NCBI RefSeq assembly: GCF_036365525.1
Contig: NC_090400.1
Location: 47,389,138-47,453,137, forward strand
Source of the DNA: Heterodontus francisci
Lineage: Eukaryota
Reading direction: 5' to 3'
DNA length: 64,000 nt
Shown here: positions 4,958-59,100 of the stretch, one piece after another
Layout: every line of letters starts with the position of its first letter
Numbering within the stretch: the first letter of the stretch is position 1
Position numbers and translations under genes: made by a program
Notes under the pieces: generated by a model
Database searches by the model: none
Told to the model about the DNA's origin: nothing
What the model saw: only the letters and a program-made list of their open reading frames with translations

Positions 4958-5137
4958 GAATGGTGCAGGCACAGATAGGACACAAGGTGCCAAACGGAAA
5001 GTTGGACTGCATGTTTCTAGAAGAGAAACAAATTGAAGGGACTGAAGTATTTGGGCCAACAACCATCAAGAGGAAGGCATTACTGCTGTTTGCGGATATT
5101 AATACAAATGAGGAAGCCATTATTTTTAAAGTTCAAG
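4958..5137 (+). CDS. TAPBPL: Tapasin-like exon: end of signal peptide and first half of N-terminal domain
   Basis: ttttaag|GAATGGTG ... GTTCAAG|gtattg; MVQAQIGHKVPNGKLDCMFLEEKQIEGTEVFGPTTIKRKALLLFADINTNEEAIIFKVQ. Confidence 0.85.
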
Positions 5138-8100
5138 GTATTGTGAAAAGATCAAGCACATCAGGAAATTAATTCTCTCTGGCGAGCACCTCCTATACTC
5201 AGGATAATCATTCAAGATGGTTTGGGAAGTTCTTTTGTGTTCCTAAAATTACTTATAATAGAAAATCCTGCCTTGTTTATTTTATTACACCAGCAGCTCT
5301 CCCATGGCACTGCTCATGGCAATTTAGACGATCCACTAATTTCTAAGTATAGGAGCAATATATGATGTAAAACACAATGGGGGTCATTTTAACCTAACCC
5401 ATGCAATGGAAAATTGATGAAATGGAGTGCAACGCTGGTTGAAGCTGGGAAAGTGACGGTGGTTTTGAATTGCTGGTGGTGACCTGGATCCAAATAGTAA
5501 TTGGTTCTTGTCTACTGAATGGCTAAGATATTGTGATTGTTGAGTAGCATATAAAAGGTGTGAAACTATGCAGATAAAAATGCATTGTCACTTCCATAGG
5601 ATACTGTATTTAATTGAATACTGCAGGAAGCTGTTTATATTTTAAAAATTGGATTACCATCAGACTTTGCCTGCCCAAGATCCTATTTGCAAGCAAGAAA
5701 AAAGCAATCTCCTCCCCCCCTCCAAATGGTAACAAACCATTATTTGCTTTTGCCAGGGAAGGAAGTGGTGGAAATTTCTGAGGATGGAGATTCCAACACC
5801 CTAATGGGTTTTAAAAAAAAACTGCATGGTTTTACAGTCCAATAGTTCTTAGTACTGCGATTTGATCAGATGTTGGTGTCTCACAAGGTAACACAAGGCT
5901 TACACTGTATTCATCAGATTCAAGTACAACGGACCGAGATTGAAAACTGCAGAATTCATCAATCAGAGGATATTGTCTCCCCAAAGACATTTCCCGCAGG
6001 AGGATAAGTGACCCATTATGGAGTTTGCTTATTAGATTTAATATTGACACTCAGTAGTATTTATCAAATTCTATTAGCGCTTCACTTTCCATTTAATTAT
6101 AACTAAACATTATTAGTTGCTTTATTTAGCCTGCTAAAACTTTGCCCCATATTTGAATATTCTGCCAATCCAAAGAGAATGATATTCTGATTAGCTCCTG
6201 CAAAAAAGGGTAGTTGTTTGTTCTCAAGTCACATGAAGGACAGATTATCACAGGCTCTGTTAGGTGTATATATGTGTCAGCTGTGGCTTAGTGGCTGCCC
6301 TCTTGTCTCTGAGTCAGTAGGTTATCAGTTCCTGTCCTACTCCAAAGACTTAAACATAAAATCCAGGCTGATAGTTCAGTTCCCTGTTCAGAGTATGCTG
6401 CACTGTTGGAAGTACTGTCTTTCCAATTGGGTGTTTAAACTCAGGTGGATGTAAAAGATGTCATGGCGCTATTTTGAAGGAGAGCCAGGGAGCTATCCCT
6501 GGGTGTTCTGGCCAATATTTAGCCCTCAATGAATCTCACAAAAACAGATGATCTGCTCATTATCCCGTTGCTGTTTGTGGGAGGTTGCTGTGCACAAATT
6601 GGCTGCTGCATTTCAACATTACAACAGTGACTACATGTCAGAAGTACTTCATTGGCTGAAAAATACTTTGGGATGTCCTGAGGTTGTGAAGTGTGCTATA
6701 ACAATACATTTCTTTCTGGATCATAGAGGACAAGGTATGGCTAAGAATTCATTTGAGAGAGAAAACAGTTCTGTACAACATCTGAAGTTGTAACATGCAC
6801 ACATTTTTGCTCAAGGCTTGTGGGGACAGGACTAATTTACTCAGAAAGGTTGACTTGTTTCAAACAAAAGTTGTGTTTAATTACCAGAAATGAGTTTGAT
6901 GAAGTCCTTTAGGAGAGACAGAGTTCATTGGTTGTTTTGCTCCCTAAGTCAGTCTTTCAAAAATAGGTGGTTAAATGGAATTGGTAATTGATTAAGAGAC
7001 ATAGATTTTCAGTTGTTTTTCTCTAAATCACAAGGTACAACAAAAAGATTTGCAGGATCCTACAACTTAGGAGGATCAGAGAGATGTGCATGTTTAGTAT
7101 TGAGAACCTTTATGTGAGTAATCAGCATCATTTTCTATTAACTTGCTGTTTAATTAGTATGTAAATCTTTCCCTTCATTTACAGAGTCTTCATTAGACAT
7201 ATTCCAGTATGTGAATGAGAAACCTGACAAATTGGATTGTGAAATTAGCAGGCATTCTACTTTTGGCATCCACGTGCCCTGGCCGCACCAGGGTAATGAC
7301 ACCAGTGAGGATATATGGTTCACAGTGACTATAAAGCACTTAAATAGGTTCACTGTAACCAGCTTCATGAGGAAGATAAAAGCACCTGATAGCCAGAAGG
7401 CTGAGAACAGTGAAGCAAAAACTGATGATGAAGATTTATCCATTGGTGATACAGACACTATGTTAGTTCAAGGTAATGTTCTAATGCTGACCAGCAATCT
7501 ATATGTTCAGAGAGAGTGCTGTGAGGTGTATTGTGGACAATATTTGCCTTTCATGGGAGTGTTAAAAATGTCTCTATTCCAATAATAATACATCTGAACA
7601 AAAAAACCCATATGGCATAAACAGCATATGACTGCATTTGTAAAATGAGCTAATGAGGAAAATACAATTTTAAATGGTTTTACCTGAGTTACTAATAGTA
7701 ATTAACTGTTGTGAAATACAAGCTAATGGCTGTTTCTTTTTACTTGTTAGTGAGCTACATTATCTACACTGGCACCCCATTGATTAGAACCAAATTGAAG
7801 CAAGACCTGATTCTGGACTGTGGCTACAAAATTGATCACAGTACAGACTTTAACATTGACTGGAGGTATCAACACAAAGGGACCAAGAAGAAATTGTTCG
7901 CCTACAATGGACGACGTCAGCAAGTTGAACACATCGAGGAAGGAGTTGAAATATTCATGGACCAGATCAAGAATGGAAATGCTTCCCTCCGCATAAGAAA
8001 TGTTCGCATTAAAGATGAGGGATCCTACACCTGTTCCGTATATGTCCCTCCGCTCTTTGGAACACACACCATCGAGTTGGAGGTTATGGGTAAGATACCG

Positions 8101-11100
8101 ATGCTGATGAATTAATCGGCTTTGAAAACAAATGGGTCAGGGGAAATGACAATTTGAATTTATTTGGGTAATGGAACAGTGTGAAAATTAGCAGAAAACT
8201 GAAAGGACAATTTTGATCTTGCTGTCTCCTGTAATCAGCCAAGGCCTCTGCTCCAGAGGTAGTGTCTGGATTAATTAGTTCAATCTACATTCAGTTGAAT
8301 ATGTGCATTTCAACATCAGAAAAAGGTGTACAGTGCAGGCGGTTAAGATTAGTGCAAACACCTGACCAAATCATCTTTAATCTTCATCCTGACTTTCAGC
8401 AATCAGTGTGATTGGAATCCAGCTCAGCTGAGGACAAGGTTGCTGCCATTTAAGTAGAGGGGCTGAATAAGTTCCAGGGTGTTTTACAGCTATAACTGAG
8501 ATGGCCCTTATGAGCAGTACAATGCCAGATCAGAGGGTAGGTGTAAAACTGAGTCCCTTAGGGATCTGGATTTGGCTCCTTGTGTTTTTTCTAATCTACA
8601 TAAATGATTTGGAAACCTGACATCAGATTTGCTGATCTCACTAAAGTAAGGAGAACAGTTGAGACAGAGGATTCATCAAAAAAGTTTGCAGAATTGGCTA
8701 TGCAGCTGGCAAATTCAATTTAGAAATTCACAGCTCATACAATACTTTCGAATTGTAGTCACTGCAAATGCGGCAGCCAATCAGCACACTGCAAGGTCCC
8801 AAATCGCTAATGATATAAGTGACCAGATCCTCAGCATTTAGTGGTGTTGGTTGATAGATAAATGTTGTCTAGGACAACAGGTAAGCTTCCCTGCTATTCC
8901 TCAAATGCTTACTTACATCTGAGAAGGCAGACAGGGTCCTCTGTTTAATGTATCATGCAAAAGACAGCACCTCTGATACTGCAGCACTCCCTAACTACTG
9001 CACAAAACGTCATCCTCAACTACAGCTGAAGTGTCCAAAGAGTGGCTTACACTGATGACTGCTTGACTCGGAGGTAGGAGTTCTACTACTGAGCCAAGGT
9101 TTGCACTTAAAATGAAATTTAGCGATGATATATTGGTTAGACATTGATCGATAACATGTCCATCATGGGGTAAGTTCTCTGAATCTGCAGCACGAGCTGG
9201 AAGCAACGCTTGAAGGGAGCACAGCTCCCCACTGGGAATACAAGATCAGTGAATTTACCCTGACAAATTTGCAATGAATGGAATGGAACAGGGGAGAGGG
9301 ACTAACTGGATAGTTCTTCCAAAGAGCTGCCAAAAGTACGATGGGCAGAATGACGACCTCCTGCCCTGCATGGTTCTATGAATTGGCAAAAGGCAACTTT
9401 GAATATGATGAGTCTATCGTTATTCTATGTTTGAACAATATAGTGAAGCAATTAACAAAGCAAGTAGAGTGCTGTGATATACACCCAGAACAGTAGAGTG
9501 CAAGGAGCTGAATTTCACAGGCAGGTCTTCTAGAGTTATATCTGGAATGGAACAGGGTGGGGTGGGGAAATTCCCATCTAGCCACTTTGGTGATTATTTT
9601 ACCTGGGATTACATCACCACTGCTAACCTGCACAAACTAATGGAGTATATGAATTTAACAGGTGTCAAACAGTGATTTTGGATGAAGGGCTGCTGAAAGG
9701 GTCTGTGTTGACATACCACGAGAGATTAAAGGTGCTTTTGGATTTGTTGAGTTCAGATCTTGGGACTACAGTGTTTGTGCTCTGCCATTAACATTGCTAA
9801 AACAGGCCCCTTTAATCCTACCTGCAAGTTTGTGGACCCATGTGGATATGGGCTTGGCCTGTTATTCTGCTGGAGGGGTAAATGAGCCAATTTTAGCAAT
9901 GTAAACCCAGGGAGGCGACACAGGGATGCTACTGTTCCATTATGCAAACTGAACAAGTGCTGAGCCTTCGCAGATGGGTGTTACAGTCAGAGTCCTGCCA
10001 CTTTGGAACATGTTCCTTGCCGATACATTAAACACTTGCTCTTCTCACCAGCTCTTTTAAGTGTACATATGTGTATGATTGTATGGGAAAAATATTACTA
10101 TCAAAAAAACTATGTAGGAAAAATTATTTAAAGGGGAATTTTTTTAGATTGGTAGTTCCCATATTGGTTCCTTGTTGCTACAGCGACATGTTCACACTGG
10201 GGCCCATATGGAAGAATATATTATTACAATTTGATTCCAGTTAAAGAGATTGAAGGCTGCAAATCCTAAGCATCAGAAGGCCTATAAAACCTGAATGTAT
10301 AACCAGTTGTCATGGCTTGTTATGACAAAGGCTTTTGTTTTCTTTGTAGAGTCACCCACTGTCTTAATGAACCCTGATTCACTTTCCCTTAAGGAAGGGG
10401 ATGAACAGAAGCTGGAATGTGAAGCAGGGCATTATTACCCACTTGATGTAGCAGTAAAGTGGATGCGGCAGGAGGGCGAGGGGCATATGCTGCCCGTCTA
10501 CATGACCAATGTCGTCTTCTCACCCCACAAGCGGAACATGGATGGCACCTACAGTGTGACCAGTTACTTCAGGTTCACAGCCTCCCTTAGAGACAATGGT
10601 ATTCTGTACACATGTCGAGTTGAGCATGCCAGCTTGGAGAAGCCAATCAAACGTTATATCCGAGTAAATGTAGAAGGTAAGCAATGAGGAAAATTCTATG
10701 ATACTGTTCATTTAAAATTGTTCCAAAGTGTGTCACAGAGTCAATATGCATTAAAATTGGATGCCTAAGGATGTGTTTAATCATACGCAGGTGGAGGGCG
10801 TTAGTTTAGGTCTTACTTGATTTATATCTAAGGAGACACAAACTGAGTGAAGGTTTGAGTGAGGAGTTGCATATTTGTAATCTTTTTTACTTTTGTAAAA
10901 TAAATGCAAGATTAAGTAAAGATTGGTTCCAGCACCATCCTTCAGAAACAAACTTTCTAGAGTAGAACATTCACGTCTTTTATTTTCGCTCTCAGGTTAA
11001 TATTGAAGCAGTGACAATTCAGTAAAAATGTCTATTAATTCACCTTATGTACCAATTTTGGAATCAATCTGGTTCCAGCAATTGCCCAAAGATCCACTTT

Positions 11101-14100
11101 TTGTCTAGGTTTTCTGTCAGTCAAAGGCTGTTGTTTTCTCATAATATGCTTCAGTCAGGAGGAAGGAGCTGAGCAAACTGAATTCTGCACAAATTTGGAA
11201 CGTTTCACTCTAACCTTAATTGAATAGAAATGACCATGCCAGTTACTCTCCTTAACTTCGAATTCAGAAAATTTGCAAAGGATGCTAAGTTCTTGTAATA
11301 CTTGGTATCCTTTTGAAAATGTCATGGAGAGTGTAAAAATTATAGTAACAAAAGTTCTTGTAATACTTTTGTTACTATCAGTTGTACATTCTCTGATATT
11401 GCCATTTCACGGTTCATTTCCCAAATTCATCAGCAGCCTCTCCTTTTTAGCCTGCTTAGGTATGGTATTCTGGGCTCTACATTCTCATGGTTATTTCCAA
11501 TGTCACTGCAAGATCTTCTGCCAGGAAAGGATAGGTCAGTCTTTCACCCTTCTCCCCACAATGGAGGACTTCAGCATTGCCAAGTGAACTAAGCTGCTGA
11601 GAACTGCCCTTGGTGTGAGCCAGTGTCAATCAGTGCCTGCTTGAGGTCATAACCGGTCAGTGGGAATCCACATCTCAAACAGTGCAACCCATCACAATGT
11701 TGATTTTTGTTCAAACTGATCTTAGTGCCCCTTATCGTCCTCAATATTATAAAGGGAGACCTTGGCACTCTCTGTCCTCCCTGGGTGCACGTTTAAAACT
11801 GCTGGACAAGTGCAACCTTGATACAGATTTTCACCCCTATTCAGTGGTTAAACTGAGCTCTGGAATAGTTTTCTGACTTGGAGCCAACCTCTCCCCACCT
11901 TCCCTGACTAGTGTGTCCCTTTCCAATTTCCTGCTCATCCCCACAAGACTCTTGAGTCTCCTCCAAACCCTGGGTCTGTTCCATGACTAGTCACTCACTC
12001 TATGTAAGAATTTCCTCCAAGTCTCAGGCCTCTCCTGCTGCCAGTCTCCCACTCCTCTTCATGGGAGTGCCCAGCCTTTTCTGACTTCCTCTTACTTGAG
12101 TATTTAAATAATGGAACTATCAACATTGATATTAACATATAACACAGATGAATGCAATTCAGTAAAGAGATAAAGAGCAAAGAAAGAATTTGCATTTATA
12201 TAGCGCCTTCCCCCACCTCCGGTCATCTCAAAGAACTTCACCAACAATGAAGTACTTTTGACCTGTAATTGCTGCTGTCATGTAGGAAACGTAGAAGCTA
12301 ATTTGTGCGTAGCAAGATCCCACTAACAGCAATGTGATAATGACCAGATTATCTGTTTTAATGGTGTTGGTTGAGGGATAAATCTTGACCAGACACTGGG
12401 GAAGCTCCCCTGTTCTTTGAATAGTGCTGTGGGATCTATTATGCCCACTTGAGAGGGCAGATGGGGCATCAGTTTACCATCTCATTTGAAAGATAACACC
12501 CCCAACAGTCCAGCACTCCCTCAGCACTGCACTGACCATCTGCCTAGGTTGTGTGCTCAGTTCTCTGAAGTGAACTGACGATCTTCAGATTCAGAGGCAA
12601 AAGAGCCAAGGCTAACACTGGTAGTAATTAAAGGAGCTGACAGGGGATATCGGAAGTGGGTTATAGTGAGAGCGTAAGAAATGGGAGCATGTGCACGTTA
12701 TAAGGTGCATCGAATCTGCTCCACAATTCACTAAGATCATGGCTGAACTTTTACATCAACTCCACTTTCCCGCCTGATCCCCATATTCCTTGATTCCCTG
12801 AGGAAAGCTGGAAAGCAATGCAGAAAGAGTATAGGAGTAAAACGGGAAATACCATTTATGAATAGGTTTCATCTGCTGGTTTACGCAAGGCATGTCACAC
12901 AGGAAAAGGGCCAAAGAATTGAGGAGAAGTCTGCGCAATTTGTTGGGTGCTGTACAAGTGAAAACCTTGGGGATCTAGGGTAAAATATGGAGACTGGACA
13001 TGACACTGAATAAATAGTAGGGAACAAAGATGAGTGGAGTATCCCAGAGTGCTTGGATCCTTGTCTTGTATCAACATAAATGACCTTGAAGAAGTTTACT
13101 GTGGATTTCTGCTTTCAATGTTCAGACAACTCTAAGATAAAGCAAAAAGGGCAGAGGATGCAGTTAACTCTGAAGAAGCATTTAAATCACCTTCGCAGCT
13201 AAGTAAACACATTAAATTTAATACTGTCAAATAAAGCATATACCATATTGGGTGAGACCACACCTAGAGTACTGTGTACAGTTTTGGTCTCCTTATTTAA
13301 GAAGGGATATACTTGCATTGGAGACAGTTCAGAGAAGGTTCACGAGGTTGATTGCTGGGATGAAGGAGTTGTCTTATGAGGAAAGGTTAAGCAGTTTGGG
13401 CCTATACTCATTGGAGTTTAGAAGAATGAGAGGGAATTTTATTGAAACATATAAGATTCTGAGGACACTTGACAGGGTAGATGCTGAGAGGATGTTTCCC
13501 TTCGTGGGGGAATATAGAACTAGGGGGCACAGTTTCCGAATAACAGGTCTACCATTTAAGATGGAAATGAGGAGAAATTTCTTCTCTCAGAGGGTCATTA
13601 ATCTTTGGAATTCTCTACCCCAGAGAGCATTGGATGCTGGGCCATTGGATATATTCAAAGTTGAATTGGACAGATTTTTGATTTACAAGGCAGTCAAGAA
13701 TTATTGGGGGCAGGCAGAAAATTGGAGTTGAGGCCACAATCAGATCAGCCATGATTTTATTGAATGGTGCAGCAGACTCTAAGGGCCAAAATGGCCTACT
13801 CCTGCTCCTATTTCTTATGTTCTTATGTGAAAAGTGAGTGATCAACCATCTGTTTTTGGTGGTGTTGGTTTGAAGGATAAAGGTTGGCCAGGACATTCTG
13901 CTCTCCCAAATTTCCTTTTTAGGGGAGTTCCGTTTTCCAATGTACACAGTGACATGTAACAGAGGTCTCACAATATTGGCACTGATGATTTTTTTTCTTT
14001 TAATTCCACAGCTGGACCTCAGATACTTCTGTTTATCTTAATTTTAATTATGATTCTACTTTTCTGTACTGTTGTGATCATCCTACTGATTTACTTGAAA

Positions 14101-17100
14101 AAAAGTGAGTATTTGCTGTTACAAGTTCTGTGCAGTTAGTCTAGCTGATGCTGTCTCTTGACCTTCACAATAATCACCTTTACTATTAAACTCTGTATAA
14201 ACACTTTTCAATAACATTTTAGTTTGGAAATTCAGACCAGAGAGGAACTTTCATAGAATTACATAGAATATGCAGCACAGGAACAGGCCATTCAGCCCAA
14301 CTAGTCTGAGCTGGTGTTTCTATTCCACGCAAGTCTCCTCCCATTCCATCTACTTCATCTCAATCTTTCAGCATATCTTTCTATTCCCTTTTCTCTCATG
14401 TACTCATCTAGTTTCCTTTTGATAGCATCTAAGCTATATTATGTCAGGGATACAGAGGTCCTACAAACTCAACCATGAGCAAAATCAATGTAGATTTATA
14501 AATGTGTCTTGGCTTGTAGTTTTGAACAAGATATTGGGAAACTTGTTATGAAGTTATGAGTTTCACAAGATTTGTAAATCTAGGGCTGCCATGTCAAGAT
14601 TAGTTTTCTAAGAAATTTTCTATTTCTTAACAAATAGCTTTATTAGGGCCAGATGGAATTTTAGTTGTTTAACTGGTAATGATGCAGATCATCTTTACAA
14701 ATGAAACACCAAAAAGAGTCAAAGACATTTTAGAATTACAAAAATGAGATGTTTTGTGTGTTTGCAAAAACACAGAGCCATCAGAACATTGAATGATCTG
14801 TTTGAAAGAGCAATATCAAGTTTTATTGGAATGCTGTGTCAGTGATTGGCTTTTATTGAGGGCACTGGTGGTTGTTGAAGATTATTTGGGTTGATTGCTT
14901 AAGAGGAGGTTGTGATGGGGTGCAACAGACTGTGTGAAAGGGGCTAGTGGTGATGTGATTATGTTAGAGCAGCTTTAGCTGGTATTTTCATTATAGAATG
15001 ATAGCAGTAACAGTTTCCTGGATGGTATGACTAGGAGGTCCTTATACCCTTGCTACCAAGTGGACTTTGGTGCAGGGAACCCAGCAGGTTAAAAACACCA
15101 GTATCATCATCAACATCCTTTACTATAGTGAAATATCTAAAGGCACTTCACAGCTAGGGATGGAAGGACATTGTGCAGCAGTTTGGGAAAACAGGGATGA
15201 TGACTGAAGATGTAGGTGAAGAGGTACATTTTCAGGGACTTTTTAAAGTGTGGAGAAATCGAGCAAGATTGAGGAGTTTAGGAAGAGGTCAGGGGTGTGA
15301 TGGTTGAATTCTCTGCCACTGATGCTGGGTTGGAAGGAGTGGGATGCATCGTAGATCAGTAGTAGATCAATATTGGAAGAGTACAGGATGTGAGATGGGA
15401 CATGGGGCTGGAGGAATTTGCAGAGGCAGAATGGGACAGAGTCAGGGAGTATTTAGCAAGCAAGGATTTTGAAATCTGGGTATGTTGGCAAGGACAGCAC
15501 CTTAGTACCAGAAAGGATCAGTGCACTGAGAAGTGAAACATAGAGGTGACAAAGATATGGATGAGAGTTTCAACACCATTGGAGGTGAGGTAGTGACAGA
15601 GGCAGGCATTGTTACAAAGGTGGAAATGGGCAGCCTTGTTGATGGATATGATTTGTGAATTGAAGCTCAGCTCAAGATGCCTACATCAGCCATCTAATAA
15701 TGTCCAATTTATTTTCAAGTCTAAATACTCAGTGGGAGTGCAGCAGTTAAACAAAAGACTCGCGGAGCCAGATTTTTAGCTTACTCACTTAAAAGAAGAA
15801 TAGAAAGGTGCTTTGACTGATATCAGCAGTGAAATTCTGTTTGCTACATGATGTGGTTGTGCTGATATGAGTTCTTAATGACTCTCTGTCCTTTCCTTTG
15901 CAGTCATGGAAAGAAGCAAGGTAAGAGAATTATAATTTGAGTTTTATTAGTGTCACAAAGTCTCACATAGAAAACCTGTAAGAAACTGATAAAGGTCATT
16001 TTAGTCAGATATAATGTGTAGAGATCACTTAATATATTGGGGAATGTAGCTGTGTTCTTTTTACCTCTGACGGTCTTGCTGTTGCATGGTTCCACGAGCA
16101 TCGGTCAACCTCCAAAATCCAACTGGTCATTCATTCCGAATTGACTAATCTGAGCTGGAGCATGAGTAGGGTTCTACAGTATTCCTGGTCTAGCAAAGGC
16201 TAAAGGGTTCAACATTCCAAGGGATCCCACAGAGTGGTAAATGGGTACCACCAGCAGTAGTGCAGTTAGGATGGACCATTAGAACATGAGTAGCCCCTTA
16301 AGCCTATTCTGTCATTCAGTGAGATCATGTGTCCTAACTTCCATCACCCACCTTGGCTCCATATCGCATCATATCCTTGGCTAACAAGAATTTATCCATT
16401 TCAGATTTTAAATTATTAATTGACTAGCATCTACTGCTTTTTGTGGGACGGATTTCCACACTTCTGCTACCCTTTTTATGTGAAGAAGTGTTTCTGAACT
16501 TCTCTCCTGAATGGCTTGGCTCTGATTTTAAGGTTATGTCCCCTTGTCATAGACTCGCCCACCAGCAGAAAAAGTTTCCCTCTATCTAACCTACCACTTC
16601 CTTTCAAAATCCTAAAAACCTCAATCAAATCACCCCTTAATCGTCTTTATTCTGGGAAATACCAGCCCAGTTTATGTAACCTCACCTCATAATTGAACGC
16701 TTGGAGCTCTGGTGTCATTCTGCTGAATCTGCACTGCACTCTTTCCTTGCAATTCTAGGATATGGTGCCCACAACATTCTGGATGTGAGATAACCAGGGC
16801 TTTGTATAGATGTACCAAACTTCCTCCCCTTTATATTCTAGCCTTCTGGATATAAAGGCTAACATTCCATTATCTTACTTGATTATTTTTTATGCCTACA
16901 TTTTAGTGATCTGTGTACATGGTGTCTAAATCTCTTTGTATCGCCACTGTTATGAGCTTTCTGCCATTTAAAAAATACTCGGTTCTGTCCTTCATCAGAG
17001 TTTTGCATAATGGGTTTTGGAAAGCATGATGCGTTTTTGGAAGGCTTTTAATGGCTAGGAAAAAGTAATAAGATAGTGAGATTTATCAAGGGCATTAAGG

Positions 17101-17722
17101 GAGTAGGACTTGGGTCACTGATGGGTCTGCCACTGTTAGTGGGGTGGAAGAAGATGCAACAGGGGGCCAGAGTCAGAGGCCTGAGGGGAACGTGCTGGGC
17201 TGCAGGAATGGAGTTAATTGCAGAGATGGGGGTTTGCTGAGTCCATGATTAGATGAGGAGCTTTTGAAAATCAATGCTTTGGGAATCAGAAAACCATTGG
17301 GCGTTAGTGAAGATGGAGATGATTGTTGCAAGGGACTTAATGCAGGCCAAACTGTGGGTAGTGAAACTTTGAGTTGTAGATGAAATGCAGGAAACCAGTG
17401 AAGAGGACTCTTGAGAGTTTGAGTCTGGAGCGGTTAAGGGTTTCCACAATGATGAGGTAGAGGAGGAGTTAGGTGTTGCTGTGGGGGTGGAAGTAGGCGA
17501 TCTTATTGATAGGTAATACTTAGAGTTTGAAATTCAGCTCAGGTTGAATCAGCAATTTAAACCACGTCATCAAAATGAATATGATTTAATAAAGTTTTTA
17601 ATTCCCTCATCGTTTAACTTTGCTTTTGTGAACAGCTCTGCATTCATTAATACCACCATGTGCTGTTATAGTATTTTCCAATGTTCTTCCTTTTATTTCT
17701 TCAACAGAAGAAGCCATACTGA
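4958..17722 (+). CDS. TAPBPL: Tapasin-family protein (tapasin-related / tapasin-like), spliced gene of ~419 aa without its first (signal peptide) exon
   Basis: Seven exons with canonical AG/GT sites and consistent phases (1,1,1,1,1,0) give N-domain + IgV + IgC1 + TM + tail ...IMERSKKKPY*. Tapasin-family motifs: LDCxFxEE..RxALLL, CEISR, WRYQHKG, GNASL, DEGSYTC, YYPLDV, HKRNMDGTYS, YTCRVEHASL. Symbol is family-level; orthology to human TAPBPL is not established. Confidence 0.9.
6273..6716 (+). mobile_element. tRNA-headed Deu-domain SINE (SacSINE1-like) with L2-type tail
   Basis: Head gtgtcagctgtggcttagtgg, core ctattttgaagg...ctggccaatatt...tgctgtgcacaaattggctgc; many copies in the window. Confidence 0.7.
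7185..7472 (+). CDS. TAPBPL: Tapasin-like exon: second half of N-terminal domain
   Basis: tttacag|AGTCTTCA ... GTTCAAG|gtaatg; LDCEISRHSTFGIHVPWP...IWFTVTIKH. Confidence 0.9.
7751..8089 (+). CDS. TAPBPL: Tapasin-like exon: IgV-set domain
   Basis: ttgttag|TGAGCTAC ... GTTATGG|gtaaga; LILDCGY..DWRYQHKG..GNASLRI..DEGSYTCSV. Confidence 0.93.
8760..9100 (-). mobile_element. Deu-domain SINE copy
   Basis: Reverse-complement match to the 6273-6716 element. Confidence 0.6.
10350..10676 (+). CDS. TAPBPL: Tapasin-like exon: IgC1-set domain
   Basis: tttgtag|AGTCACCC ... GTAGAAG|gtaagc; LECEAGHYYPLDVAVKW..DGTYSVTS..YTCRVEHASL. Confidence 0.93.
12180..12620 (-). mobile_element. Deu-domain SINE copy
   Basis: Reverse-complement match to the 6273-6716 element, including tail (ttgcatttatatagcgcctt). 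Confidence 0.7.
13240..13830 (+). mobile_element. CR1 LINE 3' fragment
   Basis: ORF 13252-13731 (RPHLEYCVQFWSP..LYSLEFRRMRG..RNFFSQRVINLWNSLP) and tail ctcctatttcttatgttcttatg. Confidence 0.9.
14012..14104 (+). CDS. TAPBPL: Tapasin-like exon: transmembrane segment
   Basis: ttccacag|CTGGACCT ... AAAAAAA|gtgagt; AGPQILLFILILIMILLFCTVVIILLIYLKK; phase 1-1. Not in the ORF track. Confidence 0.88.
15100..15680 (-). mobile_element. Old L2 LINE 3' fragment
   Basis: Degenerate reverse-complement similarity to the L2 at 55440-56108. Confidence 0.5.
15904..15920 (+). CDS. TAPBPL: Tapasin-like 17-nt cytoplasmic micro-exon (IMERSK)
   Basis: Strong polypyrimidine tract ctctctgtcctttcctttgcag|TCATGGAAAGAAGCAAG|gtaaga; converts phase 1 to phase 0. 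Confidence 0.75.
16280..16990 (-). mobile_element. Degenerate CR1 LINE 3' fragment
   Basis: Antisense CR1 C-terminal coding sequence and tail (atcaccccttaat, ttatgtccccttgt). Confidence 0.7.
17708..17722 (+). CDS. TAPBPL: Tapasin-like last coding exon (KKPY*); exon continues to donor at 17744
   Basis: tttcttcaacag|AAG AAG CCA TAC TGA ... CAGC|gtaagt; gives a C-terminal KKXX motif. Confidence 0.8.
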   Translation, partial: KKPY

Positions 17723-17764
17723 ACATTGGAAAAGAGGATTCAGCGTAAGTATAAGGACGTATTG

Positions 17765-18242
17765 GAAAGTAAGACCTTGTGTTTATATTGACCTTTAGCA
17801 TGTTCTTGGAGCATCCCAAAGTGCTTCACAACCAATAAATTACTTCGAGGTAACAAACGACATGGCTCAATGGGCTGAACGGCCTCCTTCTGTGCCCTAA
17901 ATTACTCTATGACTCTAATTGCAGGCAAATACATGAGGAAACTTGTGCACAGCAACATTCCGCAAAGAGCAAATGAACGAATGACTAATCTATTTTAATG
18001 TTGTTGGTTGAGGGAGGAGTGTTGACCAGGACACTGGACCAATTCACTGCTCTTCAAATAGATGCTTTACATCTACTTGAACCAATGGAAATGGAGGGTA
18101 GAGTCTCCATTTAATGTCTCATCTGAGAGATGACAACTCTAATAACACATCACTTCATCAGTACTCTGTTGAAGTGTCAGCCTATAAGCTACAAACCTCT
18201 GACTCAGTGACAAGAGTGCTACTGACTGAGCCAGACTGACTA
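17765..18242 (-). mobile_element. Deu-domain SINE copy with an inserted CR1 tail piece
   Basis: Match to the 12180-12620 copy; insert gggctgaacggcctccttctgtgc near 17870. Confidence 0.55.
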
Positions 18243-18867
18243 AGCATGAATATTACTTTCGTCTGTACTCGTCTTGAAACTCATGGTCACTGATGAGTGA
18301 CAGAATTTATGTCAAACCCGTGACTGGTCAGAGGATAAGGCTCATCTGGCCCTGATCCAGGTGGTTCGATCTTCTGTACTGATCCAGAGCAGGTTGTGTT
18401 GCCAACCATGTACAGATCAGTCTATTATTGGCAAGTTCATACCTGGATTGTTCTCCTCTTCCATCTCCTGCAGTTTGCTATAGTAGTGGAGAACTAGTGC
18501 CGCTATCATCTGCTGCTTACGTTAAAAGTTAGATACCATCCAGATGCCTGAGCTCTATTTTTCCCAACCAAAAAAGTAATCGGGAGCCGGCAGTATAACT
18601 CCAGTCTGCTGGCCACATGTTGTTGTAAGCAGTGGCTGGTTTTAAACCAATACTTGTCGTACACTAAATTTCTATACAGTTTCCTGCTGCTACTGCTCTG
18701 TGAAGACAACTGCCCATTAATGTCATTCATCAGACAAGGCTAATAGCAAGACCAGGCACAAGTGACAGCTCTTCAGTCAGTTTGCTTCAGAAATTTAGTC
18801 AAAGGTAGCAGTCTCTGTATTACAGATGTACAATGAACCCCACAGTGTGTGTGTGTTAGAGAAATAT

Positions 18868-19467
18868 AGGCCGGAATTTTCTGGGCCCTTTGGGAGGTGG
18901 GAAGGCATCGGGGGTTGCCATTTTGCCAGCAGTGGGAAAGTTGGTGGCTCGGATGCTTAAGTGGCCAACTAAGGGTCACTCCCAGCCTCCGCGGGCATTT
19001 TGCCCATATCGGGAGGGCAATGCTTGAAATCTAGCGGCCTCCCAGCAGGCTTCGGTGGGGGGGGCTCCTTTATGGACACTCCATGGCTCACAGAGGGGCC
19101 TCCCTCTGTGGCAAGAGCATCACTGACTCTCAGTGTCACACCGCCCCCACCTGATCACCAGAGCCTGCCTACCTCGCCCCCATGTCCCCCAGCCCCACTT
19201 ACCTGCCTTTGAGGACGATTGGCCACTGAGGCGCCCTCTGCCTGCAGCTGCAGCCTCAGCAATGGGCACCACTAGAGGTGGTACTGCTGAGGCTGCTAAC
19301 CTATCTGCCCTCTGATTGGGCTGGCAGTTCTTGGGGGCGGGCTGCTGTCCTTAATCGGCCACCACCAGCAAAACGCTGCCCCACGACCCGCCACCCAGGG
19401 AAGCAGGGTTGCCTCTCGATTTTCGCTCCAACGGCAGGATTTCAGCCATCTCTATAAAATTCAGCCC
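18868..19467. mobile_element. GC-rich MITE, PIF/Harbinger-like termini
   Basis: Terminal inverted repeat AGGCCGGAATTTT / AAAATTCAGCCC; internal motifs shared with the 51702 and 53280 elements. Confidence 0.6.
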
Positions 19468-19790
19468 ATTGTTTTAACATCTCATCTGAAAGATGTCATC
19501 CCTTACAATACAGCACTTCCCCATTACTGCACTGTCAGCCTAGATTATCTGCTCAAGTCTCTGGAGTGGGACTTCCTCGCTCAATGGTACCACTGAGTCA
19601 AGACTGACACTTCCAGGTGTTCCAAACTTGGCCATTCTTTGTTGTCAGGTTTCTGACTATATGCAAAAAGAATACAATATTGGTGATTCATTTTGTGCGA
19701 TATGTTTTCAAGTGAATGTCATTGAACGTGACGTTATTGATTGGATGTGAATGGAACCAACATGACTAATTCTTCTTTTTCTTTTACTAG

Positions 19791-20225
19791 GAGTGATAAC
19801 ATTAGCCTACTGAAGTGGGCTGAACTACCTTGACCCAGCTGACTGGACGTTACCTATTGCTTTGTTGGCCTCCCCTTAAAGATGTTAAATCCCAACTCCA
19901 TTCCCAAAAAAGTAATAGAGAGCCAAACCTGACTTTGAACGAAAGCTGGCTGATTATGTCAATGATCGCTAGTGAGAATATTCACAGGTTGGGACTGGAG
20001 GTTGAGTATGATGCAGAAGTGGCTGACTTGTGACTTCCTAGAGAAAGTAGAACTTTTCAGGCGATGTGTTTCTGCCTACAGGTTCTGTCAAGGCCTTTCT
20101 TGTGCACAGTGTGTCCAGATTGCCTTGAATGTCACTGTTAAACCAGTTTGCTAGAGCCTGGCCTGCTGGTTACATCCTCATTTCTTTCCCCCCCATTCAA
20201 TTAAAAAGAAAAATTCCATCTCTTT
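19791..20225 (+). other. Probable terminal (3'UTR) exon of the tapasin-like gene
   Basis: Branch-like gactaat, then tcttctttttcttttactag acceptor at 19789-19790; ATTAAA at 20200-20205; 3' end uncertain. Confidence 0.6.
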
Positions 20226-56100: not shown

Positions 56101-59100
56101 GTTGTTGATTGTGAGTTAACCTATAGAAATGCTGCTAGGGTGGGAGGAGGCTCTTGGGAAGCATAAATATCATCATCGACCAGGTGGGCTGAATGGCCAG
56201 TTTCTGTGGTTGAAAAATTCTCTGCATTTCTCTCTAACCTCAGTCTTGCACTAACCACAACCAGTGAGAATTGAACTTTACAAATGGAATTGAGGGGTTC
56301 TGAAGATCACCAGCGTCTAGGAACCCTTTACGTGCAAAGTAGGATAGCTATCACAAAGGAGGAGAGTCTAATTGTGGGAAGGGACGCTGGCTGGAGCTCA
56401 GCAATGTGATCATTCTGCATTCTCTGATCATTAAAACTAACCACACGTCTTTGACAGAGTGAAACGCATTATTTCCAGCACACTCTGAATCTTCCGTTAA
56501 ACCTGTGTATCAACAACAACTTGCATTTATATGGCACCTTTAACCTTATAAAACATCCCAAGGCGCTTTACAGGAAATGTGACACAGAATTGTTACAGCC
56601 ATTCGGCCCATCATGTTTGCACTGGTTGACCGAATGAGTAATTCACCCAATGCCATTCTCCCACCTTCTCCCCATAACCCTGCACTTTCTTCCTTTTCAG
56701 ATAACAGTCACATAAGGAGATATTAGGACGGGTGACCACAAGCTTGGTTAAAGAGGTAGGTTTGAAGGAGCGTCTTAAAGGAGGAGAGGGAGGTGGGGAG
56801 GCGGAGAGGTTTAAAGAGGGAATTCCAGAGCTTAGGGTCTTGTAACCTGAAGGCATGGCAGCTAATGGCGAGGTGAAAGAAATCGAGATGCGCAAGAGCC
56901 GGAGTTGGAGGAGTTCCGAGATCTTGGAAGATTGTTTGACGGGAGGTGGTTACAGATATAGGAATGGGCGAAACCATTAGAGGGATTTGAAAATAAGGAT
57001 GATCATTTTATAACTGGCATTACAGACCAGTACATCAACAAAAGCCCCACGAAAGTCTACTAGTATCTCTGAAACACTGCATTGTGCTGTGCTCTGGTTC
57101 TTTTGCTTATCTTGATTCAACAGCTGGCTGCCTTAATCAGTCATTTTTAGGCAGAATGATCAAACATCCAATTTAATTAAGGTAGATCTACAGCTTAATT
57201 AAACAGCCATTTAACTATAATCATCATCTGTTTTAAAAAAAAGCAGGTCTCTAATATAAATCGCTAAAAATAAATCCTTAATGTGCAGCTAGCAACTGCC
57301 TTTAAAGAGTCAGGACCACTCTTATGGGATTGCAAATTCTCCAGCATTGTCATGTGGGGTTTCCAGGAATTAAAGAGGAAGCTCCTGGACACTGTTGTGA
57401 GCATGGGAGAAAAAAATATAGTGGCATTAAATTAACTGTGTGTATTATTTTCTCATTTTCATTGCTTATTAGTTATGAAAAATACTGGAGTTGGGAAAGA
57501 AGGGCTATTTGACTGGGTGAGCCAGTTGGAGGGGACTGATCATTTGATGAAACCTCCAGGAAAATGTCCAACCAGAGTTGGCAACTTCAGTTCCGAATCA
57601 TCGATATGGTTTGGGTTTATGTACCAAGTACTTCGTCACTAGCTCCTAGTCATAGAATGATACAGTCTTAAAGTCATTATGGCACAGAAGGAGGCTATTC
57701 ATCCCATCGAGTCCCTGCCGGCTCGCTGTAAAGCAATCTGGTCAGCCCCATTCCCCTGCTCGATCCTCATAGCCCTGCAAGTTTTTTCCCTCAATTTCCC
57801 ATCCAATTTCCTTTTGAAATCATTAATCATCTCCACTTTCATCACCCTTGCAGGCAGCAAGTTCCAGGTTATTACCATTCGCTGCGTAAAAACGCTCTTC
57901 CTCACATTCCCCCTGTATCTCTTGCCCAAAATCTTAAATCAGTGTCCCCTAGTCCTTCTACGATCAGCTAATGGGTACAGCGGCACTTTGTTTCTCAACT
58001 GAGAAACCTAGTTAAACATCATAGCACAAGACACAGTAAGCATATATAATCTGTTTTAACATTACTACTGAGGTAGGGTTACCAGCTCTAGTTGGACGGT
58101 GGTGAAGCAGGCTGGGGGTGCCAGTCATTTTAACTTTGGTGTCAAATGGGCAATGTCAGATTGGCCGTCTGTTGCCCAATTTTCTGTTCCATCAACTTCA
58201 AATTTGGGCGAGTCGCATAACGGGCGACTGATCCAACAATGCCCACTTACCGCTCTTGCCAAAAGTTGAAATAACCTCCCGTGGTGGTTTTTAAAATCAG
58301 CACCAAAAAAGCATATGGGCTGCTTGGGTTTATAAATAGAGGAACAGAACATAGAGGCAAAGAGATCATTGCTCGAACTTTATAACTAGACTTAGCTACA
58401 GTGCTGTAAAAATGGTATGGTAATTATCATGGGGGATTTTAATCTACATGTAGATTGGTCGAACCAGCTCAGTCAGGGTAGCCTTGAGGAGGAGTTCGTT
58501 GAGTGTTTCCGTGATAGTTTTCTTGAACAGTATGTAATGGAACCGACGAGGGAGCAAGCTATCCTAGATCTAGTCCTGTGTAATGAGACAGGAATAATTA
58601 ATGACCTCATAGTTAGGGATCCTCTTGGAAGGAGTGATCACAGTATGGTTGAATTTAAAATACAGATGGAGAGTGTGAAGATAAAATCCAATACCAGGGT
58701 CCTGCGCTTGAACAAGGGAGACTACAATAGAATGAAGGAGCACTTGGCTAAAGTAGACTGGAAACAAAGATTTTATGGTGGGACAGTTGACGAGCAGTGG
58801 AGGACTTTCAAAGCAATTTTTCAAAGTGCTCAGCAAAAGTATATTCCAGTGAAAAGGAAGGACTGGAAGAAAAGGGGTAATCTGCCATGGGTGTCTAAGG
58901 AAATAAGGGAGGCTATCAAATTGAAAGAGAAGGCATACAAAGTGGCCAAAAACAGCATGAAACTAGAAGATTGGGAAAACTTTAAAGGTCAACAGAAAGC
59001 CACAAAAAGAGCTATAAAGAAAAGTAAGATAGAAAATGAGAAAAAACTAGCACAGAATATAAAGACTGATAGCAAAAGTTTCTATAAATATATAAAACGA

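What the first reader, a model, noticed from the sequence alone, without database searches (positions are those of the whole stretch)
14012..19833. A 17-nt micro-exon could toggle the tapasin-like tail between ER retrieval (KKPY) and an acidic dileucine sorting signal
Seen: with micro-exon 15904-15920 the tail reads ...YLKK-IMERSK-KKPY* (KKXX). If it is skipped, the phase-1 TM exon joins exon 17708-17744 in another frame. That frame stays open across the next junction into exon 19791 and gives ...YLKK-KEAILNIGKEDSASDNISLLKWAELP* (stop 19831-19833), which loses KKXX and gains DNISLL. Established: C-terminal KKXX binds COPI for ER retrieval; [DE]xxxL[LI] binds AP adaptors for endosomal/lysosomal sorting. 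Inference: one gene may produce an ER-resident and a post-ER MHC class I chaperone, which would also explain the intron after the KKPY stop. The motif is short and could be chance.
Basis: partly seen in the sequence, partly recalled or inferred. Interest (0 to 1): 0.8.

Follow-up and report, generated by a model that had tools for sequence, protein, structure and literature searches.

The report
Shark tapasin-like tail micro-exon
A real 17-base exon in a horn shark MHC class I chaperone gene sets the reading frame for an ancient ER-retrieval tail (KKPY); RNA shows it included, and the proposed switch to a dileucine tail has no support.

Summary
The TM exon (14012-14104), the 17-nt micro-exon (15904-15920), exon 17708-17744 and exon 19791 onward all exist. 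RNA contigs from 4 runs (one sample) join them as TM > micro-exon > 17708 and 17744 > 19791.

The window is Heterodontus francisci. The gene is the RefSeq 'tapasin-like' protein (434 aa, one isoform, ends ...IMERSKKKPY). It belongs to the third tapasin lineage (Grimholt's TAPBP-like), which is separate from TAPBP and TAPBPR (tree). The K-x-K-P-Y end is conserved from chimaeras to marsupials. The six-residue micro-exon peptide is conserved in cartilaginous fish and coelacanth.

No contig skips the micro-exon, although contigs cannot show that a rare form is absent. Basking shark RefSeq isoform X1 is a clean skip (...KK|EETILNIGKEDSM*). A cloudy catshark isoform reaches the same frame through an extended micro-exon. 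Both lose KKXX, and both stop before any DNISLL equivalent.

The dileucine motif is therefore seen only in the horn shark. It occurs in 1-3% of chance controls, and some sorting motif occurs in 21% of random open tails. Skipping a small exon to remove the ER signal is already known for human tapasin isoform 2.

Verdict: a real gene model, mostly already annotated. The toggle is unproven and the dileucine is probably chance.

The parts
4958..5137 (+). Exon 2 (N-terminal domain, residues 16-75 of P0175). Exon 1 is not in the window.
   Evidence: tblastn of P0175 against the window gives 100% identity. AG/GT flanks. No 6-residue word from the first residues of P0175 was found upstream.
7185..7472 (+). 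Exon 3 (N-terminal domain)
   Evidence: tblastn. Splice flanks.
7751..8089 (+). Exon 4, IgV domain
   Evidence: Pfam V-set, E = 6.5e-15. tblastn. Matches the IgV domain of TAPBPR structures 5OPI and 5WER at about 2e-7.
10350..10676 (+). Exon 5, IgC1 domain
   Evidence: Pfam C1-set, E = 2.6e-11. tblastn. In the RNA contigs its last letters lie directly before 14012 (loose ends).
14012..14104 (+). Exon 6, transmembrane segment (no lysine inside the membrane span) plus the stop-transfer KK. Phase 1 at both ends.
   Evidence: Covered by RNA contigs in all 4 runs.
15904..15920 (+). Exon 7, the 17-nt micro-exon (with the carried-over base it encodes IMERSK). Included in the assembled mRNA.
   Evidence: Letters TCATGGAAAGAAGCA, plus AG, lie between 14104 and 17708 in one contig of each of the 4 runs, at depths 154, 32, 66 and 78 (tables 5 and 5c). 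Near-consensus splice sites. A 6-residue equivalent is present in the orthologues held from cartilaginous fish and coelacanth.
17708..17744 (+). Exon 8: KKPY plus the stop (17720-17722), then 22 nt of 3'UTR.
   Evidence: Contigs. Read in the alternative frame, its letters give a peptide identical (ILNIGKEDS) or similar (LLIIGKEDS) to those of the basking shark and cloudy catshark isoforms.
17745..19790 (+). Intron inside the 3'UTR, GT..AG, full of repeats
   Evidence: Joint 17744>19791 in 4 of 4 runs. No Rfam family lies in it.
19791..19939 (+). Exon 9 (3'UTR).
   Evidence: Contigs, table 8.
19795..19833 (+). Hypothetical only: DNISLL (19795-19812) and the stop (19831-19833) of the skipped-exon frame.
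   Evidence: Translation check. No RNA supports this frame being used. It is absent from the two alternative-frame isoforms of other sharks.

Best explanation
This is the 3' end of the horn shark (Heterodontus francisci) member of the third tapasin lineage. That lineage is the TAPBP-like gene of Grimholt 2018, not TAPBP and not TAPBPR.

The tail is built from three small exons, as in human tapasin and TAPBPR: a TM exon, a 17-nt exon and a last coding exon. The 17-nt exon is an ancient exon that is normally included. Its main role is to put the last coding exon in the frame that ends in K-K-K-P-Y-COOH, a dilysine (KKXX/KXKXX) signal. By established knowledge, such a signal is read by COPI to return type I membrane proteins to the ER.

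The dominant mRNA includes the micro-exon. It also removes an intron that lies 22 nt after the stop, too close to the stop to trigger nonsense-mediated decay.

If the micro-exon is skipped, which is annotated in the basking shark, the product loses the dilysine signal. In the sampled horn shark tissue this form is at most minor. The DNISLL that the shifted frame reads in the horn shark 3'UTR is most likely a chance by-product and not a sorting signal.

Shown: the exons, the junctions, inclusion in RNA, conservation of the tail, and lineage placement. Inferred: COPI retrieval, ER residence, and the role in MHC class I loading.
For: -: in 4 of 4 runs one contig carries TM > micro-exon > 17708 and 17744 > 19791, and no joint 14104>17708 is listed.
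- RefSeq 'tapasin-like [Heterodontus francisci]' (P0175, a cluster of one sequence) equals the window's exons and ends IMERSKKKPY.
- at least one isoform ending in ...KKKPY in 20 of the 22 chondrichthyan species with a model. The same K-x-K-P-Y type of end occurs in coelacanth, lungfish, sturgeon, arowana, caecilian, frogs and wombat.
- maximum-likelihood tree with three groups, each at 100% support. The window protein sits in the third group.
- (PMC5824609): this lineage lacks the TM lysine, and some members carry the ER retention signal.
- (PMC4008236): in both human genes the TM segment and tail are encoded by three exons.
- the micro-exon has near-consensus splice sites.
- the alternative-frame isoforms of basking shark and cloudy catshark end at ...GKEDSM* and ...GKEDSV*, without DNISLL.
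- the motif frequency is within chance.
Against: - All RNA evidence comes from contigs of one sample, and contigs drop rare variants. A minor or tissue-specific skipped form is therefore not excluded.
- Two other sharks have RefSeq isoforms that read the same alternative frame by two different splicing routes.
- The alternative-frame peptide is identical at 9 of 9 residues (basking shark) and 7 of 9 (cloudy catshark), against 78% and 72% identity over the whole protein. This hints at constraint on these 3'UTR letters.
- In the horn shark, the spliced exon 9 would extend the skipped frame to a well-placed DNISLL.
Confidence: 0.75

Rival explanations
1. A regulated switch without the dileucine. 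In some tissues or states, sharks skip the micro-exon or shift its frame to make a KKXX-less isoform with the short conserved tail ...E-x-[IL]-L-x-I-G-K-E-D-S. This would free the chaperone from ER retrieval, much as human tapasin isoform 2 lacks the retention signal.
For: - Basking shark X1 (P0221) is a clean skip.
- Cloudy catshark X1 (P0227) reaches the same frame through a longer form of the micro-exon (by my back-calculation from the peptides, an upstream acceptor about 25 nt away).
- The alternative-frame peptide is conserved at 9 of 9 and 7 of 9 residues, against 72-78% protein identity.
- Human precedents exist (PMC11959276; PMC4008236).
- Neither form would be a target of nonsense-mediated decay (inference from stop positions).
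Against: - Such isoforms are modelled in only 2 of 22 chondrichthyan species with a model.
- None is seen in the horn shark contigs or in horn shark RefSeq.
- The conserved letters are purine-rich (GGAAAAGAGGA). They may be kept as a splicing enhancer for a 37-nt exon, or as part of the donor region, and not as coding sequence.
- The RNA support behind the two RefSeq models could not be checked.
Confidence: 0.17
2. Skipping the micro-exon in horn shark yields a post-ER isoform whose DNISLL is a working acidic dileucine signal for AP adaptors, giving endosomal or lysosomal sorting.
For: - The frame arithmetic is right, and exon 9 really is spliced to 17744.
- The motif fits [DE]xxxL[LI] and lies about 17 residues from the membrane and 6 from the C-terminus, a workable position by established knowledge.
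Against: - No skipped transcript is seen.
- The alternative frame in basking shark and cloudy catshark closes before this point.
- The motif occurs in 1.3-3% of controls, and some sorting motif occurs in 21% of random open tails.
- The cloudy catshark alternative tail has a different hit (EEALLI) at another place, and the basking shark tail has none. No position is therefore conserved.
Confidence: 0.04
3. The alternative-frame isoforms in other sharks are splicing noise or gene-model artefacts, and the skipped form never makes protein.
For: - Many odd 3' models exist for this gene: Narcine P0177, Mobula X1 P0219 and Callorhinchus P0229 read into introns, and the Rhincodon model P0182 stops after the IgC exon.
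- This shows that automated models of this gene's tail are unreliable.
Against: Two species converge on the same frame by different routes, and the frame's letters are well conserved.
Confidence: 0.04

Closest known systems
Third tapasin lineage, 'TAPBPL' in the sense of Grimholt 2018 (PMC5824609). This is not the HGNC gene TAPBPL, which encodes TAPBPR.
   Same: - N-terminal domain, then IgV, IgC1, TM segment and a short tail.
- No lysine in the membrane span.
- A dilysine end.
- Groups with lungfish, sturgeon, teleost, amphibian and marsupial members at 100% support.
   Different: The species listed in that paper's tree legend and text are bony vertebrates. Here the lineage is seen in sharks, rays and chimaeras, with an almost invariant ...KKKPY end. 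No function has been tested in any species.
Human tapasin (TAPBP) isoform 2, which joins exon 6 to exon 8 and skips the small exon 7 (PMC11959276)
   Same: A small exon between the TM exon and the last coding exon. Skipping it gives a membrane form without the ER retention signal.
   Different: - The human isoform is shown by RT-PCR and expression experiments. The horn shark form was not seen.
- It is a different paralogue.
- The exon is 17 nt here and about 35 bp in human, judged from the PCR product sizes in that paper.
Human TAPBPR beta isoform, with the extra exon 7a in the tail (PMC4008236)
   Same: A cassette exon in the three-exon TM/tail module changes the cytoplasmic tail and the trafficking of a tapasin-family protein.
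   Different: There the exon is normally left out, and including it adds 40 residues in frame. Here the exon is normally included, and skipping it shifts the frame.
Dilysine COPI retrieval signal of tapasin (Paulsson et al. 2006, cited in PMC5824609)
   Same: Lysines at -3 and -4 (and -5) from the C-terminus of a type I membrane protein of the MHC class I loading family.
   Different: The last two residues are P-Y and not those of mammalian tapasin. Retrieval has not been tested for this lineage.

Membership tests
Tapasin family, third lineage (TAPBP-like, Grimholt 2018) | Domain order: N-terminal domain, IgV, IgC1, one TM segment, short tail | tested here: met
   Pfam V-set 6.5e-15 and C1-set 2.6e-11 on single exons. 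The exon map matches P0175. The IgV exon matches TAPBPR structures at the IgV position. The N-domain exon alone finds nothing in the PDB by sequence.
Tapasin family, third lineage (TAPBP-like, Grimholt 2018) | Groups with TAPBP-like proteins, apart from TAPBP and TAPBPR | tested here: met
   IQ-TREE on 28 proteins gives three groups, each one side of a branch with 100% support. P0175 lies in the third group. The tree is unrooted.
Tapasin family, third lineage (TAPBP-like, Grimholt 2018) | No TAP-binding lysine inside the membrane span | tested here: met
   The membrane span QILLFILILIMILLFCTVVIILLIYL holds no K. The feature is stated in PMC5824609.
Tapasin family, third lineage (TAPBP-like, Grimholt 2018) | Binds or edits MHC class I | not testable with these tools
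Per PMC5824609, the function of this lineage is unknown in any species.
Dilysine (KKXX / KXKXX) COPI ER-retrieval signal | Lysines at -3 and -4 or -5 at the extreme C-terminus of a cytosolic tail | tested here: met
   ...KKKPY-COOH in the included frame. The K-x-K-x-x end is kept across the lineage.
Dilysine (KKXX / KXKXX) COPI ER-retrieval signal | COPI binding and ER localisation | not testable with these tools
   Needs a reporter or localisation experiment.
Cassette-exon switch of the tail (as in human tapasin isoform 2) | Both the included and the skipped junction are present in RNA of the same species | tested here: inconclusive
   Inclusion in 4 of 4 runs and skip in 0 of 4. These are contigs of one sample, and contigs drop rare variants. 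Raw reads were not available, and read laying is limited to one call.
Cassette-exon switch of the tail (as in human tapasin isoform 2) | The skipped form occurs in related species | tested here: met
   Basking shark RefSeq X1 P0221 ends ...QLKK|EETILNIGKEDSM. This is an automated model whose RNA support was not checked.
Acidic dileucine [DE]xxxL[LI] adaptor-binding signal | The motif lies in the tail of an isoform that is actually made | tested here: not met
   No transcript with the skipped frame was found in horn shark contigs or RefSeq.
Acidic dileucine [DE]xxxL[LI] adaptor-binding signal | The motif is conserved at the same place in relatives | tested here: not met
   The basking shark and cloudy catshark alternative tails stop after GKEDSx.
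Acidic dileucine [DE]xxxL[LI] adaptor-binding signal | More than chance would give | tested here: not met
   The motif occurs in 1.3% of shuffles and 2-3% of open 26-codon windows. Some sorting motif occurs in 21% of such windows.

The most novel reading that the evidence does not exclude
Sharks regularly make a KKXX-less membrane isoform of the third-lineage tapasin by skipping or frame-shifting the 17-nt exon. The letters just after the KKPY stop would then be a conserved second reading frame (...ILNIGKEDS). One gene would give both an ER-retrieved and an exported MHC class I chaperone, an arrangement that parallels human tapasin isoform 2 and may predate the split of the paralogues.
Probability: 0.15. 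Interest if true: 0.55.

Novelty: new member of a known kind. Interest (0 to 1): 0.3.

Why it matters
The third tapasin lineage has no known function, and placental mammals have lost it. This report shows three things about it. Cartilaginous fish have the gene. Its dilysine end and its 17-nt frame-setting exon are ancient. Its dominant mRNA keeps the ER-retrieval tail. Together these argue that it is an ER-resident chaperone like tapasin and not an exported one like TAPBPR.

If a KKXX-less isoform proved to be regulated, it would show that switching ER retention by splicing the tail is an old feature of the family. On present evidence that part is only a lead. The dileucine motif should not be built upon.

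Tried and rejected
- **Orthologous genomic DNA.** The other DNA collections hold no shark genomes. A metagenome scan for the 22 letters after the stop found nothing. The synonymous versus non-synonymous test of the second frame therefore could not be run.
- **More proteins with the skipped tail.** A region search with the last 48 residues of basking shark X1 found none. That search sees only cluster representatives, so isoforms inside clusters stay hidden. The clusters themselves were read with the listing of cluster members.
- **An RNA gene in the 3'UTR intron as the reason for that intron.** Rfam gave only a mir-622 match at 24.9 bits against a threshold of 86. Rejected.
- **A poly(A) site right after exon 8.** An AATAAA lies near 17845, inside a repeat, and would make exon 8 the terminal exon. 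Rejected as the main form, because all four runs splice 17744 to 19791.
- **TAPBP or TAPBPR identity.** Rejected by the tree and by the lack of a TM lysine.
- **Reading depth as isoform evidence.** In run X1 the exon 9 contig has depth 191 and the upstream contig 154. Contig depths cannot rank isoforms, so this was not used.
- **Joined spliced model.** Exons were searched one by one. Full-length comparisons used database proteins that the tools returned.
Full report
**Observation**

I read 13900-16100 and 17500-20100 and recomputed the frames.
- A 93-nt TM exon at 14012-14104, phase 1 at both ends.
- A 17-nt exon at 15904-15920 with near-consensus sites (CCTTTCCTTTGCAG| and AAG|GTAAGA).
- A 37-nt exon at 17708-17744 that encodes KKPY, with the stop at 17720-17722.
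- An acceptor at 19791.

With the micro-exon the tail is ...YLKK-IMERSK-KKPY*. Without it, the frame stays open through 17744 into 19791 and ends at 19831-19833. DNISLL then lies at 19795-19812.

**RNA evidence**

The look-up of sequencing runs returned four runs from one sample and one study, kept as Logan contigs. Laid on 13950-19940, each run holds one contig (depths 154, 32, 66 and 78) with the following structure.
- It runs from the end of the IgC exon straight into 14012-14104.
- It then carries the letters TCATGGAAAGAAGCA. Together with the next two letters (AG), which the aligner placed on the acceptor AG at 17706-17707, these are the 17-nt micro-exon.
- It then covers 17708-17744 and jumps to 19791 (GT..AG).

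The runs are therefore RNA. The micro-exon is included in the assembled transcript of all four, and the intron after the stop is real. No joint 14104>17708, 14104>19791 or 15920>19791 is listed.

Contigs drop rare variants, so this shows dominance of the included form and not absence of a skipped one. Run X1 also has a low-depth unspliced contig over 19345-19820.

**What the gene is**

Single exons carry a V-set domain and a C1-set domain. I therefore sent the IgV exon alone to the representative library.

The best single-stretch hits were tapasin-family proteins, many of which end in KKKPY. A word search with the skate orthologue returned 'tapasin-like [Heterodontus francisci]' (P0175, 434 aa, a cluster of one sequence). 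Its sequence equals the window's exons residue for residue, including IMERSK and KKPY.

The window is therefore horn shark, and RefSeq already models this gene with the micro-exon and a single isoform. The exon map is:
- e2 4958-5137
- e3 7185-7472
- e4 7751-8089
- e5 10350-10676
- e6 14012-14104
- e7 15904-15920
- e8 17708-17744
- e9 from 19791

Exon 1 is not in the window.

**Lineage**

A maximum-likelihood tree of 28 proteins gives three groups, each with 100% support: TAPBP, TAPBPR and a third group. The third group holds the window protein together with chimaera, sharks, rays, coelacanth, lungfish, sturgeon, teleosts, amphibians and wombat.

This matches the 'TAPBPL' lineage of Grimholt 2018 (PMC5824609). 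That lineage is present in fish, frogs, reptiles, birds and marsupials and is lost in placentals. It has no TM lysine, and some members carry an ER retention signal. Cartilaginous fish have all three lineages.

**Conservation of the included frame**

A ...KKKPY end is present in at least one isoform of 20 of the 22 chondrichthyan species with a model. The two exceptions, Narcine and Rhincodon, have only an aberrant model. The end is KKKPY, KRKPY, KPKPY or KSKHY in bony vertebrates. A dilysine of the KKXX or KXKXX type is kept in these.

The micro-exon peptide is six residues long in the chondrichthyan orthologues held and in coelacanth ([VIAS]-x-[EDV]-[KR]-x-K). The 17-nt exon is therefore an old, normally included exon whose length is fixed by the need to reach KKPY in frame.

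Human tapasin and TAPBPR also encode the TM segment and tail in three exons (PMC4008236).

**The skipped frame in other sharks**

Reading the members of the 90% clusters showed two relevant RefSeq isoforms.
- Basking shark X1 (P0221, 437 aa) ends ...QLKK|EETILNIGKEDSM*. Its X2 ends ...QLKK|ATERNK|KKPY.
- Cloudy catshark X1 (P0227, 452 aa) ends ...IKK|VTSYLFLCSHRKKQ|EEALLIIGKEDSV*. The peptides fit an upstream acceptor that lengthens the micro-exon by about 25 nt and shifts into the same frame. This is my back-calculation and was not checked on DNA.

Both lose KKXX, and both stop straight after GKEDSx. The horn shark tail KEAILNIGKEDSA continues into SDNISLLKWAELP only because exon 9 begins GAGTGATAAC.

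In the other two species the stop could be G|TGA of a slightly different exon 9, or G|TAA of an unspliced donor. In horn shark the unspliced reading is GCG TAA. I could not tell which applies without their DNA.

Either way, DNISLL is not shared. [DE]xxxL[LI] is absent from the basking shark alternative tail, and it sits at another place (EEALLI) in the catshark tail.

**Chance**

The alternative frame stays open for at least 26 codons in 24% of shuffles. The acidic dileucine occurs in 1.3% of shuffles and in 2-3% of open 26-codon windows of this window. At least one common sorting motif occurs in 21% of such windows.

**What remains open**

The alternative-frame peptide ILNIGKEDS is identical between horn shark and basking shark, and 7 of 9 residues match in the catshark. 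Whole-protein identity is 78% and 72%. The in-frame micro-exon peptide differs at 3 of 6 residues.

The 22 nt after the stop therefore look constrained. This could reflect a second coding frame. It could equally reflect a purine-rich splicing enhancer (GGAAAAGAGGA) needed to define a 37-nt exon, or the donor region. Only nucleotide alignments can separate these.

**The intron after the stop**

It holds no Rfam family. The stop lies 22 nt upstream of the last junction, so by the usual 50-55 nt rule the mRNA is not a target of nonsense-mediated decay. No second isoform is needed to explain the intron.

**Comparison with what is known**

Skipping a small exon between the TM exon and the last coding exon to give a tapasin without the ER retention signal is described for human tapasin isoform 2. 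Its specific primer spans exons 6 and 8 (PMC11959276). A cassette exon that changes the tail and trafficking is described for human TAPBPR beta (PMC4008236).

**Verdict**

The gene model is right, but it is already in RefSeq. The included KKPY form is the dominant and deeply conserved product. A KKXX-less isoform is plausible in sharks but was not seen in horn shark. The dileucine signal is most likely chance.

Probabilities: best explanation 0.75; regulated KKXX-less isoform 0.17; full dileucine model 0.04. Interest 0.3.

Noticed in passing
window 10677-10690; protein P0182: The Rhincodon typus RefSeq model XP_020386056.2 ends ...VEGKQ. That is what one gets by reading through the donor of the IgC exon; the same letters follow 10676 in this window. 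The model therefore looks truncated, not like a real soluble form.
   Followed up: partly
protein P0231 (Callorhinchus milii, UniRef V9KWE2): A protein filed under the UniRef entry V9KWE2 skips the TM exon in frame and keeps ...RWERNKKKPY. It would be a soluble form that still carries the dilysine end, which would be useless in the ER lumen. I take it from memory, not from a tool, to be cDNA-derived.
   Followed up: no
protein P0227 (Scyliorhinus torazame X1): The peptide LCSH|RKKQ fits reading the polypyrimidine/CAG acceptor region of the micro-exon as coding. That implies an alternative upstream acceptor about 25 nt away, which shifts the frame into the same alternative tail as exon skipping does.
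   Followed up: partly
window 19789-19793: The acceptor of exon 9 is a tandem TAGGAG (a NAGNAG-type site). Using the second AG would drop one codon (S) from the hypothetical alternative frame and change nothing in the real protein.
   Followed up: no
window 14150-14349, 16350-16750, 17750-17950, 19350-19750: Intronic repeat pieces are covered by RNA contigs at depths up to about 1,600, with 95-99% identity and loose ends. These are transcribed copies of dispersed repeats from elsewhere in the genome.
   Followed up: no
window 13222-13728 (+) and 58396-60822 (+): Open frames with the look of LINE reverse-transcriptase tails. One is a 169-aa fragment in the intron before the TM exon. The other is an 809-aa open frame near the window's end.
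   Followed up: no
proteins P0032, P0195 (Callorhinchus and Pristis TAPBP): True tapasin of cartilaginous fish ends in ...EKEKRN or ...EKEKSH. This is a KXKXX-type dilysine, unlike the KKKPY of the third lineage.
   Followed up: no
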